Part shown: positions 3,884 to 38,002 of the stretch, in pieces
Layout: every line of letters begins with the position of its first letter
Numbering within the stretch: position 1 is the stretch's first letter
Virus record (IMG/VR): IMGVR_UViG_3300046665_000548
Span: 124,001 to 188,000 of that record
Reading direction: 5' to 3' (one strand)
DNA: 64,000 nucleotides
Program-made: the position numbers and the translations under genes
Notes under the pieces: generated by a model
Told to the model about the DNA's origin: nothing
Databases searched by the model: none
What the model saw: the letters and a program-made list of their open reading frames with translations, nothing else

Positions 3884-4172
3884 CGCATGTTGCCTGGACA
3901 CCCTTCCCACGGTCTGCCACGACGTTTCGGGTATCTGATGCGTAATTGCGGCCTATCGTATCGCAACTTTTTAGTTGTCACGAGACCGTGGCAAGACTGG
4001 ACCGAGTTGGGGCCGATCAAGAAACGTCTCGGGATCAAGACCAAATACAAGGTGGAGCCTTGGACACCATCAACGACGACAGTTCGTTGGTGGATCGCGC
4101 TAGTATGCGCATTTTTATTTGGACGTTACCTCTAAACTTGACCATTGGGGATGCATCGCTGTAAATAGAGAC

Positions 4173-4211
4173 ATGCGTAACCCTCGAAACCCAATCTTTG
4201 CTGTCGATTGA
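4173..4211 (+). CDS. putative leader peptide MRNPRNPIFAVD
   Basis: ATG 5 nt after TAAATA (4162-4167); its stop lies in a hairpin (4204-4234) abutting the GAGG SD of the next gene. Confidence 0.55.
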   Translation: MRNPRNPIFAVD

Positions 4212-4242
4212 GCGGACTTTCCCGCTTTAATCGAGGTACATC

Positions 4243-4812
4243 TTGTCTAAGAAAGATTGGCGCAATCTGGGCGCTGTAACTGTTTGCGACTACAACAACC
4301 GTCGCTATCAGTTCAACTCTCTTGCCGAAGCTGCTCGTTACTTTGAACGCTACATCCCCGACCTGAAAAAGGGTCACCTGGGATATGAGCAGTTTGAGAC
4401 GCGTCCCTACCGGCGAGTTTTCATCGGCGGCGATAGCCACGTGTTCTACGACGAACTCGGGCTCACCATTCCTGTGTGGAAAGTTCAGGAAGCCTGCCGC
4501 AACCTGCCCTACGAAGCCCGCAGAAGCCGCTGGAGCCGTTTCCCTGATTACGATCATGCCAAGCACTACCGCAACGGTAGCGTGCCTGGAGTGCGTTGTA
4601 GGCGCTGGCATCGCGGCACTGGATCGCCGCGTCTCCACACTCAGTCGGAGATTCGCGAAAATGACTTTGCGAACAACTACGATGAGGACTGCGCGGAATT
4701 CCAAATCAAAACGCGCGGGCGGCGCTCTAAGCTTCCCCACCAGTGGGACGATCCAATGCGCTCGCGGCGCGGCGACGGATGGAAGCAGCACCGCCACAAT
4801 CAGTGGCGGTGA
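4243..4812 (+). CDS. Arg-rich hypothetical protein (TTG start)
   Basis: GAGG SD at 4233; 189 aa; basic C-terminus LPHQWDD...WK...QWR. Confidence 0.65.
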   Translation: MSKKDWRNLGAVTVCDYNNRRYQFNSLAEAARYFERYIPDLKKGHLGYEQFETRPYRRVFIGGDSHVFYDELGLTIPVWKVQEACRNLPYEARRSRWSRFPDYDHAKHYRNGSVPGVRCRRWHRGTGSPRLHTQSEIRENDFANNYDEDCAEFQIKTRGRRSKLPHQWDDPMRSRRGDGWKQHRHNQWR

Positions 4813-5242
4813 CTCAGACTTTTCGGATCATATAGTAGAGGTCCCAGACAAGGACCGAGACTGCGCCATCTTCGTGATCTTCCCACGGCCACGCCTCCTC
4901 ATCTGGAAAGGGCGGAAACGGAAACAGCATCACCGATGGGTCTTTGCGCGCCCAACGCGCAGACGCTTCCATACCGGCATGAAACGCTACCCGTGCTTGG
5001 GCATCAAGGAGAGTGGGAACCTCCGTAAACCCGTTCATCTCTACTAGCGCGTCATTGCAGTGAACAGTGAAACTCATGTGCTCAAATCGATGTCAGGGCG
5101 GACCCGAGTTAGGTATACGAATGCAGTGGCGAAGCCTATTGCCCCCGCCAAGTTATCCACGCGCGGTAGATCAAACATCCAACAAACTGTACCAGCGAGG
5201 GCTAATGCGGCCAAAGCTCCTCCGCATGACAATCTGACCACT

Positions 5243-5629
5243 TCAAGAAACCTGCGCATTTTTCATCATTTCTTGTTCGAGTTGACCCACGTCAAGAACA
5301 GGCATTGCGGTAATGTCTATCACGCCTTTGTATAGAAATACACCAGGAACGTCTATCAGATGAGGATCGTGTCTTAGCATGGTTTCATTCACGCGCGCAT
5401 CATCGATAACAATAACACGAAATTCTTTTAGCTGTTGAGAAGGAATACTATTCTCGTCACCCGCGTCGATATAGTGCTCGATCAGAAAATAGAGACAGAA
5501 TTCTGGCGTAAGACTGAGATAGACGCCGTTGTCACAGTCTGGATAGTTCTTCTCTACCAAAGCTCCGCCCAGCCCAAACCGGCGAATACTCGGGAGCTTC
5601 CAGGAGTGGGTTCCGTGATAGTAGGGCAT
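5243..5629 (-). CDS. ADP-ribosyltransferase-like / KptA-Tpt1-like fold protein
   Basis: YYHGT...IRRFGL...GVYLS pattern typical of the H-type ART/Tpt1 fold. Confidence 0.55.
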   Translation of the reverse strand: MPYYHGTHSWKLPSIRRFGLGGALVEKNYPDCDNGVYLSLTPEFCLYFLIEHYIDAGDENSIPSQQLKEFRVIVIDDARVNETMLRHDPHLIDVPGVFLYKGVIDITAMPVLDVGQLEQEMMKNAQVS

Positions 5630-13535: not shown

Positions 13536-13622
13536 GAGCCGGTGTCCCGAGTGGCGAAGGGGGCGGACTTTTAATCCGTTGTTGAGAGACCATCGTGGGT
13601 TCGAGTCCCACCCGGCTCCCCA
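13536..13622 (+). tRNA. tRNA with TTT (Lys) anticodon in a class II, Tyr-like body
   Basis: GAGCCGG/CCGGCTC acceptor, loop CT-TTT-AA, 15-nt variable region, C73, CCA. Confidence 0.8.
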
Positions 13623-31751: not shown

Positions 31752-32333
31752 ATGTTGCGCGGCGTTATTTTAGTGTTTTTGTGTTTCTCTTCGATGGCCA
31801 ATGCGGCCGGTTATTTGAAAGTCGGAGAGGTAACGCGAGCGCCGCGCGGCTGGATAGAATTCTGCTCTGAAAATCCGAAAGAATGTGTCGTGGGCCAATA
31901 TCAGGCCCGCGACATCATTATTACGCAGACGGCGTGGAAGGATTTGGTACGGGTCAATCGTTGGGTCAACGAGACCATCAAGCCAATGACCGACATGGAC
32001 CATTGGGGTGTGATCGAGAAGTGGTCGCTACCGACTGATGGTTACGGCGATTGCGAAGATTACGTCTTGCTCAAGCGCAAAATGCTGATCGACGCTGGCT
32101 GGCCCCGCGAGGCGCTGCTTGTCGCCGTGGTGCGCGACAAGAAAAACGATGGCCATGCCGTGCTCATCGTGAAAACCGACAAAGGCGAGTATGCTCTGGA
32201 TAACCAGAACGAAAACGTTTTGCCGGTTGGAGAAACAGGGTATCGTTACGTAAAGCGTCAGTCGCAGACTGACGAAAATTCCTGGGTCTCGCTCGGTTAT
32301 TCGACGGGTCCGGAAGCTGTAGGCAGCAACTGA
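31752..32333 (+). CDS. bacterial transglutaminase-like cysteine proteinase (BTLCP, peptidase C93)
   Basis: Signal peptide, GDCEDYVLLKR, GHAVL, LDN catalytic triad. Confidence 0.92.
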   Translation: MLRGVILVFLCFSSMANAAGYLKVGEVTRAPRGWIEFCSENPKECVVGQYQARDIIITQTAWKDLVRVNRWVNETIKPMTDMDHWGVIEKWSLPTDGYGDCEDYVLLKRKMLIDAGWPREALLVAVVRDKKNDGHAVLIVKTDKGEYALDNQNENVLPVGETGYRYVKRQSQTDENSWVSLGYSTGPEAVGSN

Positions 32334-33398
32334 GGATTGCTATGCGAACCACACGGCAAGGCGGGATGATGCACGGTGGCCCATTCGGGGGCAAGGCCAT
32401 GGCCTATAATTCCCATTTGATTCCCGTGATCATCAATGGTCTACGTGTTGGGGCATATGTGTGGGACGAGGACCATTGGGTGTGGGAACGTGAATAATCG
32501 TTTCCAACCATGGCAATGCCAAAAATGCGGAGCACAGATCGGTTATCTCGGTCTGTTCTTCCAGAAATTCTTGGGGTGCTTCCTTTTCGTTGATTGCGAG
32601 AGGAAGAAATAACAACGGGGGTGTCATGTGTCGCAGTTTCTTGACGCGCTTAAGGACTTCTTCTCGTTCGGGAAGAACCGTCCTATTGTAATTTGCGTGA
32701 GGGTCGCTAATACGCGCGTGTGGCCTCCCTACCTTGATGAACGTTGCGAGGCAGTATGCTTTTCTTGCGACACAATGGTATCGTATGAAAAGAAGAATAC
32801 CCGATATAGAAAGCTCTGCTACGAGTGCCACTTGCAGGGGAGAGCTTGAGATTTGATTGGACTATAATGGCTAAGAAGAAGCTCGCGCGGCCTCCCGTGC
32901 GTTCAATTCGCAAGGACCTTCGCGAGTGTTTGAAAGAATGTGCTCACCGAGATGAACTGTATTCGTCTTCGGTGCATTGGGTAAAGATACTCGAAATCGA
33001 ACGTCGCAAAAAGCTAGCCAAGCTTCTCAGGCTGCAAATCAAAACATTCGCGAGAAAATCGTAATCAGCCACGAACCTACTGGTTCTCCAAACATCAGCA
33101 ATACACAAAACACAATGAGAAATGGCACTGCCAGACAACGGGCTTGCACGCGTTTTAGAATGTCCATCATCGCTCCTGTCTAATCATTTTGTTCATAGAT
33201 CGCATAGTGTTTAACTTGCGATCTATCTCTTTCAATTTATTCTGCAATTCGTCATTTTTGGTCAGCGTTGAATTGAAGCTCGCCATGCCGACCAAACACG
33301 TCAAAACGTCCAGTTCCTCGTTTGTGAATTTCGACATCATGTCCTCCCGTTGAAAGAATTTACTCGACTATCTACCAGATTTCGTTCTAAATAGGGTC

Positions 33399-33476
33399 AT
33401 GAAGAAGTTAGCCGTTCAGTTTTTGCGACTTATGAACCCGTCCGCCTTGGCGGCCGGGAACGATTTAGCGCACTGA
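33399..33476 (+). CDS. putative leuS leader peptide MKKLAVQFLRLMNPSALAAGNDLAH
   Basis: TAAATA 5 nt upstream; 5 Leu codons (TTA, TTG, CTT, TTG, TTA); followed by an SD-sequestering hairpin. Confidence 0.7.
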   Translation: MKKLAVQFLRLMNPSALAAGNDLAH

Positions 33477-33485
33477 CGGCATGCT

Positions 33486-33516
33486 CTCAAGAGTGTGTCG
33501 CCCACACACTTTTGAG
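33486..33516 (+). promoter_or_regulatory. 13-bp hairpin sequestering the leuS Shine-Dalgarno
   Basis: CTCAAGAGTGTGT/ACACACTTTTGAG includes GAG of GAGGA. Confidence 0.7.
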
Positions 33517-33522
33517 GACGAA

Positions 33523-34785
33523 ATGGAAAACGATTTTTACTGCACCGTCATGTTTCCGTATCCATCTGGAGCGGGACTGCACCTGGGCCATTACTACAAT
33601 TACGCGATCACCGACTCGTACTGCCGATGGCTGCGCTATCGCGGGCAGTCTGTGTTTCAACCATTCGGCTATGATGCCTTTGGTCTGCCCGCTGAGAACT
33701 ATGCACGCGAGATTGGCGGCGATCCGGCCGATGTGACGCGAGCGAACATTGCGCGTTTTCGCGTGCAAATGGATCGCATGAACACGCAGTTCGATGAGCG
33801 GCTGGTAACATGCGAGCCGCCATATGTGAAATGGACGCAGTGGCTGTTTCTGCGAATGCAGGAGCGCGGACTGGCTTACAAGGCTTGGGGTCGAGTGAAC
33901 TGGTGCCCATCGTGCGAAACCGTACTGGCTAATGAGCAGGTCCAAGACGGCCACTGCGAGCGCTGTAGTTCGGCCGTAGACCCACGAGAGATGAACCAGT
34001 GGTATTTCCGGATCACCGACTACAAAGACCGCCTGATTGCCGGACTGGATCATATCGATTATCCGGAAGGCACAAAGAAAATGCAGCGCGTCTGGCTGGA
34101 GAACCTGCAAGATTGGTGCGTGTCTCGTCAACGTAAATGGGGCTGCCCGATCCCGGTAGAGGGAGAAACGGATACCCTGGATACGTTCGTGGACTCGTCA
34201 TTTTACTTTCTGCGGTATCTGACCGATTCGACGGAGGAGTTTTTGCCAGAGGGTGCGTTCAAACAGGTCGATCTGTACGTGGGCGGGGCCGAGCATGCCT
34301 GTATGCATCTGATCTACGCGCGCTTTGTGCATATGTTTCTGTATGATATCGGCGTCGTTCCAGTTGAGGAGCCATTCAAAAAGGTCATTCACCAGGGCAT
34401 GATCACCAAGGATGGGGCAAAGATGTCCAAGTCCAAGGGAAACGCGGTCAACGCGGATGATTATGATGCGGATGAACTGCGGTTCTACCTGATGTTCCTG
34501 GGACATTACTTCGACGGTGGTGATTGGTCCGATCAACACATCACTGGCGTTCGTCGCTTTTTCGGCAAGATGAAACGTTGGATGAGCGAACCCGGCTCGG
34601 ATCAAATCGACACGTCTAAGTTCGAGGAACTGATCGACCGCAACACGCGAGCGTTCAAGTTCAACAAGGTGGTAAGCGGCTTCATGGAGTTCTATAATCA
34701 GAACAAATCACGTAAGCCTGATGCGGAAAGCTGTCAGAAAATCGAGACACTACTGCGAATATTCGCACCTGGATTCGGTAACTAA
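33523..34785 (+). CDS. leuS: leucyl-tRNA synthetase, minimal (no CP1 editing domain)
   Basis: MFPYPSGAGLHLGH, GYDAFGLPAEN, WCPSCETVLANEQV, DWCVSRQRKWG, DTFVDSS, KMSKS; only 420 aa. Confidence 0.9.
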   Translation: MENDFYCTVMFPYPSGAGLHLGHYYNYAITDSYCRWLRYRGQSVFQPFGYDAFGLPAENYAREIGGDPADVTRANIARFRVQMDRMNTQFDERLVTCEPPYVKWTQWLFLRMQERGLAYKAWGRVNWCPSCETVLANEQVQDGHCERCSSAVDPREMNQWYFRITDYKDRLIAGLDHIDYPEGTKKMQRVWLENLQDWCVSRQRKWGCPIPVEGETDTLDTFVDSSFYFLRYLTDSTEEFLPEGAFKQVDLYVGGAEHACMHLIYARFVHMFLYDIGVVPVEEPFKKVIHQGMITKDGAKMSKSKGNAVNADDYDADELRFYLMFLGHYFDGGDWSDQHITGVRRFFGKMKRWMSEPGSDQIDTSKFEELIDRNTRAFKFNKVVSGFMEFYNQNKSRKPDAESCQKIETLLRIFAPGFGN

Positions 34786-34834
34786 TGTCTGTGAAATTTT
34801 TGAAATACGTGCCGCGATGGCCAAAGCGGGTTGT

Positions 34835-34863
34835 TAGCCGGGCTCCTTTTTGGAGCCCGGTTA
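34835..34863. terminator. 12-bp hairpin downstream of leuS
   Basis: TAGCCGGGCTCC/GGAGCCCGGTTA. Confidence 0.5.
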
Positions 34864-35145
34864 CTCATCCAAGGTTACTGAGTAAAGGTTGGGGGCCGTT
34901 TCGTTCGGAATGGTATTCGTTCTGCTCTCGGCATCCATATCATGACGAGACCTGCGGCGCGTGTCACGCCGGAACATGGAATAACATCTATAAGCTGTGG
35001 ATTTCCAACAAAGTCCACGACTGGGCGTATCCGCTATGGTATTGGTGGAAGAACTCAAGGATATCGAAATGACTTTTGATCTCGGAATACCTCCATTCAC
35101 CCGCGCGCGGCATCGGGCCGCACCACCTCGCGGGTGGAGGATGAC

Positions 35146-35391: not shown

Positions 35392-36193
35392 TGCAGATCG
35401 AGAACCGCATTAGTATCATCAAGCGTCGCATCAGCGATCTTGAGCAACGATCAGAAGAAAATGGCGATCATGTTTACCAGTTAAGGGATGATATCTTGTC
35501 TGGAAAGATCAGCCAAAGTGAATTTACCGCTAGACTAGATCGGGTTCGCGAAGTACATTCCAGTCTTCGTGTCGAGCTTGATGCTTTGGCGCGCGAAGCT
35601 GGAGCGTTACGTGGAGCAATTACATCGTGATTATCTAGATATCTTGGCGAAGAAGTTTCGCGCCGAGGTAATGATCGTAACTGCCGATGCTTTTATTGAT
35701 AGGCATCTCGACACTGGTCTGACAATCGAAGACATGGCGACGCGGTTGAACACCAGCGCCGATGCGATTCGCCGTATGTTCGACATGAATGACCCCGCTA
35801 CCAAACGGGGTCTCGGTCTGTTGTCCGATATGTGCGCCGCTTTGGGATGCCGCCCGGTCGTTACCATTCGCGATATCGGCAGTCCTCCTGAAATCACTAC
35901 AGATCGCGAAACTCGTACCGGGGACCATCTGCTCCAAGTGGCGAAATCGCTCGGGTGGCCCGACGATGGCGAGGGCGCGCTTGAGTTCGTTATGCGGAGG
36001 ACACGTGAGGTTGCGCTCGAAGATGCAGCAGCCACGACCGCGCTCCGAGAGATCGCGTCTATCGGTGCCCAAATCACTGATCCGGACAACGTATACGGGG
36101 TTCAGATGACGAACCTTGCCATCGCCGCGTTGGCGCGTCCTCCTGGTTCACAAAACACTTGACGTTTTTCTAATTCCTGTCATTGGATACGGC

Positions 36194-38002
36194 ATGCACG
36201 AATATCGTTCCCATACTTGCGACTCGCTGTCGCCATCACAAATCGATCAGACAGTTCGCCTGTCCGGTTGGTGTCACCGTATCCGTAACCATGGTGGTAT
36301 CCTTTTCATCGATCTTCGCGATCACTACGGCATCACGCAGTGCGTGATCGATCCCGCAGTTCTCCCTCAGGCTGAAAGCCTTGGTGAAGAATGGGTGATT
36401 CGCGTCGATGGTACAGTGCGATTTCGACCCCCAGGTACCGAGAATTCAAAACTCTCGACAGGAGAGATCGAGGTAAAGGTAGCTTCGCTTGACGTGCTCG
36501 GACCGGTCGTCGGGGCGCTGCCGATGCCTGTCGCGCATCTCCATTCCACGAGCGACGGTACGTTGCAGGAAGTCGAATATCCAGAAGACCTTCGGTTGAA
36601 ATATCGATTCTTGGACCTTCGCCGCGAACGGCTGCACGAGAACATGATGAAGCGAATGAAAATCATTCGCTGGCTGCGTCATCGCATGGAGGACGAAGGC
36701 TTCTTCGAATTCCAGACGCCCATCCTTACCGCATCGTCCCCAGAAGGGGCGCGAGACTTTCTCGTGCCTGCTCGGTTGCATCCAGGCAAGTTCTACGCGT
36801 TGCCGCAGGCTCCGCAGCAGTTCAAGCAACTTACCATGGTTGCTGGCTTCGACCGATACTTTCAAATTGCGCCATGCTTCCGTGATGAAGCTGCACGTTC
36901 AGATCGGTCACCGGGCGAGTTCTATCAACTCGACATCGAAATGAGTTTCGTAACTCAGGAAGACGTGTTTCGGGTTGTCGAACCGACGATTCGAGATTTG
37001 TTCAAGGAGTTCGGCGGCGACAAAGCCATCACCGAGACCTTCCCGCGTATTCCGTACAAGGAAGCGTTGCTGCGTTTTGGTACCGATAAGCCAGACCTGC
37101 GTAACCCTCTGCGTATTGTGGACGTGTCCAAGGCTCTCCAAGCCGACGACATGACACTCGCCCCTTTCAAGAAAGGCGTCGGCAGAGCTATCGTTGTGCC
37201 AGCCGCGATGCTGGCCGGGAAGTCGCGCAAGTGGTTCAAGGATATGGAAGGCTGGGCACAATCCCAAGGCGCGGCCGGTTTAGGATATCTGAGCGTCATG
37301 CTGACCGATGGTCGCGTGAGCTTCGCTGGACCGCTTGCTAAGTTTTTCGGTGAGCAATCTAGCGAGTTGGTTCGCGTCGCCGCCGACACAATCTTTGACG
37401 AGGGAGATGTCATTTTCTTCGCCGTTGGCGAGGAAAGCTCCACCATCAAATTCAGTGGACTGCTTCGTACAAAGCTCGGAGAGGAGCTTGGTCTGATCGA
37501 GCAAGACCGGTTCGAGTTCTGCTGGATCGTGGATTATCCCATGTTCGAGTGGAATTCTGACGAGAAGAAGATCGACTTCTCCCACAACCCCTTCTCGATG
37601 CCTCAGGGCGGCCTGGAGGCGCTTGAGGGCGATCCATTAGGTGTTCTTGCCTATCAGTACGATATCGTCTGTAATGGCATCGAGCTTTCGTCTGGTGCCA
37701 TCCGGAACCATCGACCAGATATCATGGAGAAGGCGTTCTCCATCGCTGGCTACGACAAGGAGGTGTTGGAAGAAAAGTTCGGCGGCATGCTGAATGCATT
37801 CCGTTGCGGAGCACCACCGCATGGTGGAATTGCACCGGGTATCGACCGCATGGTTATGCTTCTGTGCGAAGCTGAGAACCTGCGCGATGTCGTGCTGTTC
37901 CCAATGAACCAGAAAGGACAAGACCTGATGATGGGCGCTCCGTCTTCAGTAACTGCAAAGCAACTTGACGAGTTGAATATCAGGATCATTCCGAGGAAAT
38001 AA
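36194..38002 (+). CDS. aspS: aspartyl-tRNA synthetase (non-discriminating type)
   Basis: [50 protein letters not shown]. Confidence 0.95.

What the first reader, a model, noticed from the sequence alone, without database searches (positions are those of the whole stretch)
33388..33525. Leu-rich leader peptide and SD-sequestering hairpin before phage leuS
Seen: TAAATA, then a 25-codon ORF with 5 Leu, all T-rich codons (TTA, TTG, CTT, TTG, TTA) and none CTG/CTC. A 13-bp hairpin (33486-33516) then buries GAG of the GAGGA SD for the ATG at 33523. GCGCACT (33468-33474) could alternatively pair with AGTGTGT (33492-33498). Established precedent: pheM attenuation of pheST. Inference: translational attenuation turns on phage LeuRS when Leu-tRNA is short, extending the sensing system from tRNAs to a synthetase. 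The ORF-track start at 33481 is probably wrong.
Basis: partly seen in the sequence, partly recalled or inferred. Interest (0 to 1): 0.8.

Follow-up and report, generated by a model that had tools for sequence, protein, structure and literature searches.

The report
Conserved uORF leader before phage mini-leuS
The short reading frame and hairpins in front of this giant phage's stripped-down leucyl-tRNA synthetase gene form a conserved control region, also found before the same gene in other giant phages and soil bacteria, that keeps the gene's ribosome-binding site folded away; sensing of leucine supply is plausible but unproven.

Summary
These are the 25-codon ORF (33399-33476), its five Leu codons, the 13-bp hairpin (33486-33516) holding GAG of the GAGGA Shine-Dalgarno (SD), the possible 33468-74:33492-98 pairing, and the true leuS start at 33523.

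Comparison with relatives shows a real, conserved leader. It lies upstream of the same ~420-aa minimal LeuRS in at least nine other sequence variants, about six lineages, from huge phages and Microvirga replicons. The shared parts are:
- a short uORF in a fixed frame;
- an invariant CGA-CUU (Arg-Leu) pair, usually preceded by another Leu codon;
- exactly 5 nt later, a GC-rich hairpin inside the uORF with compensatory changes;
- an SD held in RNA structure.

No Rfam family matches. The peptide is otherwise unconserved, so the act of translating it, not its product, seems to matter.

The Leu-sensing interpretation is only partly supported. "Leu-rich with T-rich codons" is not conserved (2-4 Leu, and CTG/CTC are used). 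It does free it partly in some relatives, and one relative (L204) has a textbook four-segment attenuator.

Verdict: a new variant of ribosome-mediated attenuation. The signal is unproven.

The parts
33364..33393 (+). Candidate promoter TCGACT-N18-TAAATA, whose -10 box ends 5 nt before the uORF ATG. It is ambiguous in this copy: TTGAAA-N17-TACCAG (33350-33378) and TCGACA-N17-AAGAAT (33331-33359) score as well or better.
   Evidence: In relatives L012, L064/L066/L120/L206 and L202 the best sigma-70 match ends 5-7 nt before the uORF ATG, which predicts a leaderless uORF. Only 2.6% of random positions give a match of score >=8 with a 4-8 nt gap.
33399..33476 (+). Upstream ORF (leader peptide) of 25 codons, MKKLAVQFLRLMNPSALAAGNDLAH, ending in TGA.
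   Evidence: An ATG-initiated ORF in the same frame relative to CGACTT is present in all 10 variants tabulated and in L206. L204's copy has its own GAGGAA SD. The peptide is not conserved outside R-L and the hairpin-encoded P...G.
33423..33431 (+). Core codons TTG-CGA-CTT (Leu-Arg-Leu). CGACTT (33426-33431) is invariant in every variant and always lies 5 nt before the P2 hairpin.
   Evidence: Alignments A4 and A5. The first Leu is TTG, TTA, CTT or CTG in different lineages, Glu in L012 and Pro in L120.
33437..33458 (+). P2: a GC-rich hairpin inside the uORF, CCCG-U-CCGC / CUUG loop / GCGG-C-CGGG.
   Evidence: Covariation over 10 sequences: 97.5% of cells paired, two pairs with changes on both sides (G-C/A-U and C-G/U-A), U-G/C-G/U-A variation at another pair, and 0 of 500 shuffles reach the observed score. 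The G.U pairs place the structure on the + strand RNA.
33468..33474 (+). In the free-RNA fold, 33467-33480 instead pairs back to uORF codons 5-10 (33411-33428).
   Evidence: Enforcing the pairing gives -10.5 kcal/mol against -21.9 for the hairpin state. An analogous short pairing in the GC-rich bacterial group (GCGAA:UUCGC) shows one compensatory change in L066, seen by inspecting the sequences.
33485..33517 (+). P3: a 13-14 bp hairpin whose 5' arm (CUCUC...) acts as an anti-SD and whose 3' arm carries the leuS SD. Its base lies 8-9 nt after the uORF stop.
   Evidence: Equivalent SD-masking structures occur in L059, L064/65/66/120/206 (CUCUC/GAGAG) and L004 (AACCUC/GAGGUU). In L012 and L202 the 5' part of the uORF itself pairs with the leuS SD/AUG region.
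33514..33525 (+). leuS ribosome-binding site: SD GAGGA (33514-33518) and start codon ATG (33523-33525).
   Evidence: The N-termini of all homologues align to this ATG.
33523..34785 (+). Regulated gene: a minimal LeuRS of 420 aa with HIGH = HLGH and KMSKS present. It lacks the CP1 editing domain, the Leu-specific domain and the C-terminal domain.
   Evidence: Pfam PF00133/PF09334. TIGR00396 scores 402 bits, below its 548-bit cutoff. It aligns to T. thermophilus LeuRS residues 36-226, 418-436, 487-578 and 636-707 only. More than 6,500 relatives score E < 1e-50.

Best explanation
Positions 33399-33522 form a conserved cis-acting 5' leader that makes translation of the minimal leuS depend on what ribosomes do on a short upstream ORF.

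Shown:
- The uORF, an invariant CGA-CUU codon pair, a covarying hairpin (P2) starting exactly 5 nt after it inside the uORF, and an RNA structure that buries the leuS SD all recur upstream of orthologous mini-leuS genes in several diverged phage and bacterial lineages.
- The peptide sequence itself drifts freely.
- By default the SD is closed.

Inferred:
- With CGA in the P site and CUU in the A site, the base of P2 sits at the ribosome's mRNA entry (about +11). A ribosome therefore tends to dwell on the Leu-dense L-R-L core, and this dwell grows longer when charged tRNA-Leu is scarce.
- A ribosome held there keeps the 5' half of the leader single-stranded and lets the downstream RNA refold, so the SD opens more often and more LeuRS is made.
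- A ribosome that runs to the stop lets the leader refold and reclose the SD.
- This is ribosome-mediated translational attenuation of the kind shown for leaderless Cys sORFs in mycobacteria.
- In this copy the SD hairpin is so stable that opening probably also needs the terminating or queued ribosome, whose leading edge reaches the basal pairs that hold A33515-G33517, or needs co-transcriptional kinetics.
For: - Conservation: the leader was found by eye and with covariance model R1 upstream of leuS in L059/60 (88% LeuRS identity), L004/61/62, L012, L064/65, L066, L120, L202/203, L204 and L206. It was found nowhere else in the window or in about 100 other loci.
- P2 covariation.
- Spacing: CGACTT-N5-CCC is fixed in all variants.
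- uORF: it is always ATG-initiated and in frame. It is predicted leaderless in three lineages and SD-led in L204.
- Peptide drift: L064 and L066 differ at 9 nonsynonymous and 2 synonymous codons, counted by hand from the sequences.
- Leu density: the five core codons hold 1-3 Leu (mean about 2.3), and the first Leu is written with four synonymous codons.
- SD masking: accessibility is 0.14 here, rank 0.03 among the window's gene starts.
- Folding with a stalled ribosome: masking raises SD accessibility in L012, L202, L004, L062 and L204, and L204 has a complete 0:1/2:3 versus 1:2 design.
- Precedents: leaderless Cys sORFs whose stalled ribosomes unmask a downstream RBS (bioRxiv 10.1101/834739), and predicted leuS attenuators in Streptomyces (PMC1262725).
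Against: - In the window copy, in L059 and in the GC-rich bacterial group, masking a ribosome at the Leu codons or at the stop leaves P3 intact (SD unpaired 0.13-0.42, unchanged).
- The only candidate anti-sequestor here is 11 kcal/mol worse than P3.
- Only one Leu codon is invariant. The neighbouring Leu is Glu in L012 and Pro in L120.
- An invariant Arg codon (CGA) has no obvious link to leucine.
- The invariance of CGACUU at nucleotide level fits an RNA recognition site as well as it fits a codon requirement.
- Frame +2 is also free of stops in most variants, so openness of the frame is not itself evidence of translation.
- The promoter, and therefore leaderless status, is ambiguous for this copy.
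- There are no expression data.
Confidence: 0.45

Rival explanations
1. The uORF and SD hairpin couple or damp leuS translation without sensing any amino acid. P3 keeps leuS translation low. Ribosomes that finish the uORF 8-9 nt before P3 melt its basal pairs or re-initiate at leuS, so output simply follows uORF translation.
For: - The stop-to-P3 distance is 7-10 nt in the window, L059, L004 and the GC-rich group.
- The SD nucleotides pair with the most basal positions of P3.
- In L012 and L202 the 5' part of the uORF pairs directly with the leuS ribosome-binding site, so any passing ribosome opens it.
- Equilibrium folding gives no Leu-specific switch in this copy.
Against: - It does not explain the invariant CGA-CUU, its fixed 5-nt distance to P2, or the Leu density of the core.
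- In L204 the stop is 17 nt from the sequestering hairpin, and the design is a classical attenuator.
- In L012 and L202 the uORF ends inside P2, far from the SD.
Confidence: 0.25
2. The conserved CGACUU plus P2 module is an RNA operator or riboswitch-like site bound by a protein (for example LeuRS itself, as ThrRS binds the thrS leader), a tRNA or a ligand. On this view the ORF is incidental.
For: - CGACUU is invariant at nucleotide level although both amino acids have six codons.
- P2 covaries as RNA and keeps G.U pairs.
- Two lineages (L012, L202) end the ORF inside the P2 loop, so the C-terminal half of the peptide is dispensable.
- Frame +2 is open as well.
Against: - There is no tRNA-like, T-box or other Rfam match even at E <= 10.
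- The base after CUU is C in the GC-rich group, unlike a T-box specifier.
- An in-frame ATG next to a promoter or an SD is kept in every lineage.
- The minimal LeuRS lacks the domains that usually grip tRNA.
Confidence: 0.15
3. The leader has no regulatory role. The small ORF is a chance ORF, and the hairpin is a stability element or leftover terminator in a divergent intergenic region.
For: - The Leu count and codon bias are only marginally unusual.
- About 15-20 equally strong hairpins occur per strand in the window.
Against: - The module is conserved with covariation across lineages whose LeuRS proteins are only 66-77% identical, and across phage and bacterial replicons.
- It follows leuS whatever the upstream gene is: divergent here, co-directional in L059.
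- No U-run follows the hairpin on either strand.
Confidence: 0.05

Closest known systems
Leaderless polycysteine sORF attenuators of mycobacteria (Canestrari et al., bioRxiv 10.1101/834739)
   Same: - A short ORF sits at or near the 5' end of the transcript.
- The product is irrelevant.
[quoted passage not shown]
- Control acts on translation, not termination.
- Ribosome position on the sORF is the proposed signal.

In L012, L202 and L004 the sORF region itself pairs with the leuS SD, as in that system.
   Different: - There is no long run of cognate codons, only 1-3 Leu around an invariant CGA-CUU.
- A conserved hairpin lies inside the sORF at a fixed distance.
- In this copy the anti-SD lies outside the sORF.
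- The target is a synthetase.
- The hosts are huge phages and Alphaproteobacteria.
- Leaderless status is only predicted.
pheM-pheST leader-peptide attenuation in E. coli, and the predicted leuS/trpS attenuators of Streptomyces (PMC1262725)
   Same: A leader peptide containing cognate codons sits upstream of an aminoacyl-tRNA synthetase gene, with homeostatic logic.
   Different: - Those act by transcription termination, through a hairpin followed by a U-run. Here no U-run follows P3, and the hairpin overlaps the SD.
- Their leader ORF ends before the terminator, and its regulatory codons are more numerous.
erm/cat/cmlA-type translational attenuation
   Same: A short leader ORF is followed by a hairpin that hides the SD of the regulated gene. 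A paused ribosome is expected to remodel the RNA.
   Different: - Those depend on a specific nascent arrest peptide plus a drug. Here the peptide is not conserved beyond R-L.
- No segment 2:3 pairing strong enough to compete was found here.
T-box riboswitches and the thrS operator (other ways of controlling synthetase genes)
   Same: They sit in the same place and serve the same purpose: a structured leader before an aaRS gene. Translational T-boxes also mask the SD.
   Different: - No T-box or tRNA-like signal was found (Rfam at E <= 10, ARAGORN).
- The element is much shorter (about 125 nt).
- It contains a conserved translated-looking ORF.

Membership tests
Ribosome-mediated leader-peptide attenuator (general) | A short leader ORF upstream of the regulated gene that is positioned to be translated | tested here: met
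   An in-frame ATG ORF covers CGACTT in all 10 variants tabulated and in L206. The -10 box ends 5-7 nt before the ATG in three lineages. L204 has a GAGGAA SD 7 nt before its uORF ATG. Translation itself was not measured.
Ribosome-mediated leader-peptide attenuator (general) | A cluster of codons for the cognate amino acid at the regulatory position | tested here: inconclusive
   The five core codons hold 1-3 Leu (LRLMN, LRLIN, LRLIL, LRLRL, LRLLS, LRLIV, ERLIN, PRLRL). Only CUU is invariant. The whole-peptide Leu count is 2-5.
Ribosome-mediated leader-peptide attenuator (general) | Mutually exclusive RNA structures selected by ribosome position | tested here: inconclusive
   The feature is met in L204 (0:1 + 2:3 versus 1:2) and partly in L012, L202 and L004. 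It is not met at equilibrium in the window copy, L059 or the GC-rich group.
pheM/trpL-type transcription attenuator | An intrinsic terminator (hairpin followed by a U-run) between the leader ORF and the gene | tested here: not met
   P3 is followed by GACGAAATG. The terminator scan finds nothing between 33341 and 33522. Only L204 has a U6 run after its sequestering hairpin.
Leaderless sORF translational attenuator (mycobacterial Cys type) | [quoted passage not shown] | tested here: met
   P3 pairs with G33514-G33517. SD accessibility is 0.14, rank 0.03 in the window.
Leaderless sORF translational attenuator (mycobacterial Cys type) | The transcript begins at the sORF start codon | tested here: inconclusive
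   This is predicted from promoter spacing in L012, the GC-rich group and L202. It is ambiguous in the window, L059 and L004, and L204 is SD-led. No transcription start-site data exist.
T-box riboswitch | Stem I with a specifier loop and the conserved T-box sequence, detectable by the Rfam model | tested here: not met
   cmscan of 33300-33600 at E <= 10 returns only a chance miRNA hit. The gathering-threshold scan of the window finds only tRNAs.
tRNA-mimic operator (thrS type) | A tRNA-like arm recognisable as tRNA | tested here: not met
   ARAGORN and the Rfam tRNA model find nothing in the leader. Binding was not testable.
Drug-dependent arrest-peptide attenuator (erm/cat) | A conserved nascent-peptide arrest motif | tested here: not met
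   The peptides share only R-L plus the P...G encoded by the hairpin. An RLR motif occurs only in the GC-rich group.
Bacterial-type LeuRS (the regulated gene) | Full domain set: catalytic core, CP1 editing domain, anticodon-binding domain and C-terminal domain | tested here: not met
   Only the catalytic core and the start of the helical domain align. TIGR00396 scores below its cutoff. HIGH and KMSKS motifs are present. Activity is not testable here.

The most novel reading that the evidence does not exclude
The leader is a previously undescribed class of charging sensor. Its parts are a 5'-terminal mini-ORF, an invariant CGA-CUU pair held at the ribosome's decoding centre by a hairpin placed exactly one entry-channel length downstream, and a masked ribosome-binding site. 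It switches on an editing-less accessory LeuRS when Leu-tRNA(Leu) runs short. The sensor-plus-enzyme cassette moves as a unit between huge phages and rhizobial megaplasmids and chromosomes.
Probability: 0.3. Interest if true: 0.75.

Novelty: new variant of a known kind. Interest (0 to 1): 0.55.

Why it matters
Huge phages carry many translation genes, but how these are regulated is essentially unknown. This would be a concrete, conserved control element for one of them. It is tied to a very widespread minimal LeuRS (more than 6,500 relatives) whose activity and purpose are unknown.

The same cassette sits on a 1.18-Mb plasmid of a cultured strain, Microvirga lotononidis HAMBI 3237, so the question can be tested by ordinary genetics. 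If Leu-tRNA sensing is confirmed, leader-peptide attenuation would be extended to a phage-borne synthetase. It would also show a compact geometry in which a codon pair is placed at a fixed distance from an intra-ORF hairpin. If sensing is refuted, the conserved CGACUU-hairpin module remains an unassigned RNA motif worth an Rfam entry.

Tried and rejected
1. Rfam at gathering threshold and at E <= 10 gave no family, so T-box, Leu leader and tRNA mimicry were dropped.
2. Megablast of the locus against deposited phages found nothing.
3. A strict DNA pattern scan of IMG/VR returned only the window's and L004's contigs plus three chance hits inside GC-rich coding sequence (L055-L057).
4. An outer helix P1 closing P2 was examined. 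Each lineage can form one, but the partners differ (ACUUCGC/GCGAAGU, UCGACUUAU/AUGAGUUGA, GACUUA/UGAGUC, GCG/CGC), and the L004-to-L062 changes are not compensated. It is therefore not claimed.
6. Pairing of the P2 3' strand with the P3 apex (GGCGGC:GUCGCC) was found by eye in this copy. It is not conserved in L059.
7. P2 as an intrinsic terminator was rejected because the U content after it is inconsistent across lineages.
8. -1 or +1 frameshifting at CGA-CUU was rejected because no conserved slippery sequence exists.
9. The MAFFT alignment of whole leaders was not structure-aware. The covariance-model alignment was used instead.
10. The repeat finder missed P3 because the G.U pair breaks the seed. 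A sliding-window fold was used instead.
11. The ORF overlapping the leuS stop (34785-35072) is not conserved in L059.
12. An analogous leader before the AspRS gene was looked for and not seen.
13. Openness of the uORF frame was dropped as evidence, because frame +2 is open too.
Full report
**Observation.** The window is part of a 607,744-bp IMG/VR contig. It carries 16 tRNA genes and at least two synthetase genes.

- TAAATA at 33388-93.
- A 25-codon ATG-to-TGA ORF at 33399-33476 (MKKLAVQFLRLMNPSALAAGNDLAH), with Leu codons TTA, TTG, CTT, TTG and TTA.
- A 13-bp hairpin at 33486-33516, 14 bp if U33485.G33517 is counted. Its 3' arm contains GAG of the GAGGA SD that precedes the ATG at 33523.
- GCGCACT (33468-74), which is complementary, with two G.U pairs, to AGTGTGT (33492-98).

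The leuS start at 33523 rather than 33481 is confirmed. Every homologue starts 7-11 residues before the MFPYPSG motif.

**Is it more than chance?** Taken alone, the Leu count is marginal: P = 0.048, and 5.6% of comparable small ORFs in the window are as Leu-rich. The codon choice gives P = 0.016, but that test was chosen post hoc. The hairpin is in the most stable 0.17% of 36-nt windows. The leuS SD is less accessible than at 97% of 68 crude gene starts in the window. The decisive evidence is comparative.

**The gene.** The product is a 420-aa LeuRS-like protein with HIGH and KMSKS motifs. It aligns to Thermus LeuRS only over residues 36-226, 418-436, 487-578 and 636-707. It therefore lacks the CP1 editing domain, the leucine-specific domain and the C-terminal tRNA-binding part. 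It scores below the NCBIfam leuS cutoff. The family is very large: more than 6,500 proteins score E < 1e-50, many on contigs of 0.2-0.6 Mb.

**Relatives.** I collected about 200 loci encoding relatives. In many of them leuS directly follows tRNA genes, often tRNA-Leu. A subset carries the same leader as the window:
- L059/L060 (88% LeuRS identity)
- L004/L011/L061 and L062
- L012
- L064/L065
- L066/L201
- L120/L200 (Microvirga soli)
- L206 (Microvirga lotononidis plasmid)
- L202/L203
- L204

A covariance model (R1) built on the core finds exactly these copies. It finds a single copy in the 64-kb window and none in roughly 100 other loci. On a LeuRS tree the positives fall into two clades, with negatives between them.

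The GC-rich subgroup is bacterial:
- The M. soli contig carries repA/parA-repB/parB genes.
- The L201 contig carries gyrB-dnaN-dnaA-rpsT.
- L206 is a 1.18-Mb plasmid of a cultured strain.

So the leader travels with the gene and is not phage-specific.

**What is conserved.**
1. An ATG-initiated uORF of 15-26 codons, always in the same frame relative to an invariant CGACTT (Arg-Leu).
2. Usually a Leu codon just before it, written as TTG, TTA, CTT or CTG in different lineages. It is Glu in L012 and Pro in L120. There are often further Leu codons just after (LRLIL, LRLRL, LRLLS).
3. Exactly 5 nt after CTT, a GC-rich hairpin P2 (33437-33458 here).
   - 97.5% of cells are paired over 10 sequences.
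   - Two pairs change on both sides.
   - Further pairs change in wobble-compatible ways.
   - 0 of 500 shuffles reach the observed covariation.
   - The G.U pairs place the structure on the leuS-sense RNA.
4. A leuS SD held in structure.
   - It is a local hairpin with a CUCUC-type anti-SD in the window, L059 and the GC-rich group.
   - It is AACCUC/GAGGUU in L004.
   - In L012 and L202 the 5' part of the uORF pairs with the SD/AUG region.

Outside R-L and the Pro...Gly imposed by P2 the peptides are unrelated. L064 and L066 differ at nine nonsynonymous and two synonymous codons. In L012 and L202 the ORF stops inside the P2 loop. The peptide product therefore seems irrelevant, while the start codon, the frame and the core codons are kept.

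In L012, the GC-rich group and L202 the best sigma-70 match ends 5-7 nt before the uORF ATG, which predicts a leaderless uORF. Only 2.6% of random positions give a match of score >=8 with a 4-8 nt gap. L204 has a normal GAGGAA SD before its uORF. For the window, L059 and L004 the promoter is ambiguous.

**Mechanism tests.** I folded each leader free, with a ribosome footprint masked at the first Leu, at CUU and at the stop, and with the whole 5' part masked.
- In the window copy, L059 and the GC-rich group, P3 survives every mask and SD accessibility is unchanged.
- In L012, L202, L004 and L062, masking at the core codons raises SD accessibility.
- L204 behaves as a classical four-segment attenuator. 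The free RNA pairs the 5' uORF with a segment at the stop, and forms an SD-containing hairpin followed by U6. A ribosome at L-R-L releases the alternative pairing.

A comparable short pairing between the uORF end and the P3 apex in the bacterial group (GCGAA:UUCGC) shows one compensatory change in L066. It would disturb only the top of P3.

Two geometric regularities are suggestive:
- With CGA in the P site and CUU in the A site, the P2 base lies at about +11, the ribosome's mRNA entry. This inference rests on the known footprint of the bacterial ribosome.
- In the window, L059, L004 and the GC-rich group the uORF stop lies 7-10 nt before P3. The leading edge of a terminating ribosome would then reach the basal pairs that hold the SD.

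**Conclusion on function.** The best-supported reading is a uORF-dependent translational control element in which ribosome position on a Leu-dense core decides whether the masked SD opens.
- The closest demonstrated analogue is the leaderless Cys sORF attenuators of mycobacteria (10.1101/834739).
- pheM-pheST is a less close analogue, because there is no terminator here.
- Predicted leader-peptide attenuators before leuS already exist for Streptomyces (PMC1262725).

I put 0.45 on Leu-responsive attenuation, 0.25 on signal-independent coupling or damping, 0.15 on an RNA operator recognised by a protein or tRNA, and 0.05 on no function. The remaining 0.10 is unassigned.

The claims of Leu-richness and T-rich codons are specific to this copy and should be dropped. 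The invariant feature is CGA-CUU at a fixed distance from P2.

**Known families.** There is no Rfam match and no tRNA-like fold. The element fails the T-box, thrS-operator, erm-type and pheM-type definitions on tested features. It fits the general definition of a ribosome-mediated attenuator only in part. I rate it a new variant of a known kind, with moderate interest (0.55). It is a genuine, conserved, unannotated leader attached to an unusual and very widespread enzyme, and it is testable in a cultured bacterium. Its signal and switch remain unproven.

Noticed in passing
window 33523-34785; relatives P0001-P0120: The LeuRS is a 420-aa minimal form lacking the CP1 editing, Leu-specific and C-terminal domains. 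More than 6,500 relatives of similar length exist, mostly on very large phage-like contigs. Whether it charges tRNA-Leu, and how accurately without editing, is unknown.
   Followed up: partly
L200 (Microvirga soli NODE_55), L201 (contig with gyrB-dnaN-dnaA-rpsT), L206 (M. lotononidis 1.18-Mb plasmid, 4001-5260): The mini-leuS and its leader also sit on bacterial replicons, presumably as an accessory paralogue. A predicted AAC(3) gene lies about 2 kb downstream in L206, and a PF00144 beta-lactamase-family gene lies upstream in L200. This raises the untested idea of a stress or resistance-type back-up synthetase.
   Followed up: partly
L006 2813-2985, L008 2896-2979, and L017, L021, L024, L027, L028, L034 upstream of leuS: In many relatives the mini-leuS starts a few nucleotides after a tRNA gene, often tRNA-Leu, instead of having the uORF leader. 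This suggests co-transcription with tRNA arrays as an alternative arrangement.
   Followed up: partly
window 36195-38002: A second synthetase gene encodes a bacterial-type AspRS (PF00152, PF01336 and a GAD domain). Its likely start is ATG 36195, not the mechanical TTG at 36116. TTGACG begins 35 nt before that ATG and there is no clear SD, so it may be leaderless. It has no uORF or hairpin like the leuS leader.
   Followed up: partly
window 34835-34865: A very stable GC-rich hairpin (AGCCGGGCTCC TTTTT GGAGCCCGGTT, about -24 kcal/mol) lies 50 nt after the leuS stop, with no U-run after it. It sits inside the mechanical ORF 34785-35072, which has no Pfam or NCBIfam hit and no counterpart after leuS in L059. 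It may mark the end of the leuS transcript.
   Followed up: no
window 31752-32333: This ORF encodes a bacterial transglutaminase-like cysteine proteinase (PF06035, E = 9e-65), two genes upstream of the leuS region.
   Followed up: no
window 13536-13622; L001 5528-5601; L005 4586-4664: ARAGORN reports several odd tRNA calls: an 87-nt tRNA-Lys(ttt) in the window, a tRNA with a four-base anticodon (gtag) in L001, and one with a two-base anticodon in L005. They could be introns, frameshift suppressors or artefacts.
   Followed up: no
H34, H35, H37 (Kovacikia, Nostoc and Aulosira plasmids): Cyanobacterial plasmids encode single-piece LeuRS-like proteins about 39% identical to the mini-LeuRS. One is annotated as a 'class I tRNA ligase family protein', so short LeuRS forms occur in further bacterial lineages.
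   Followed up: no
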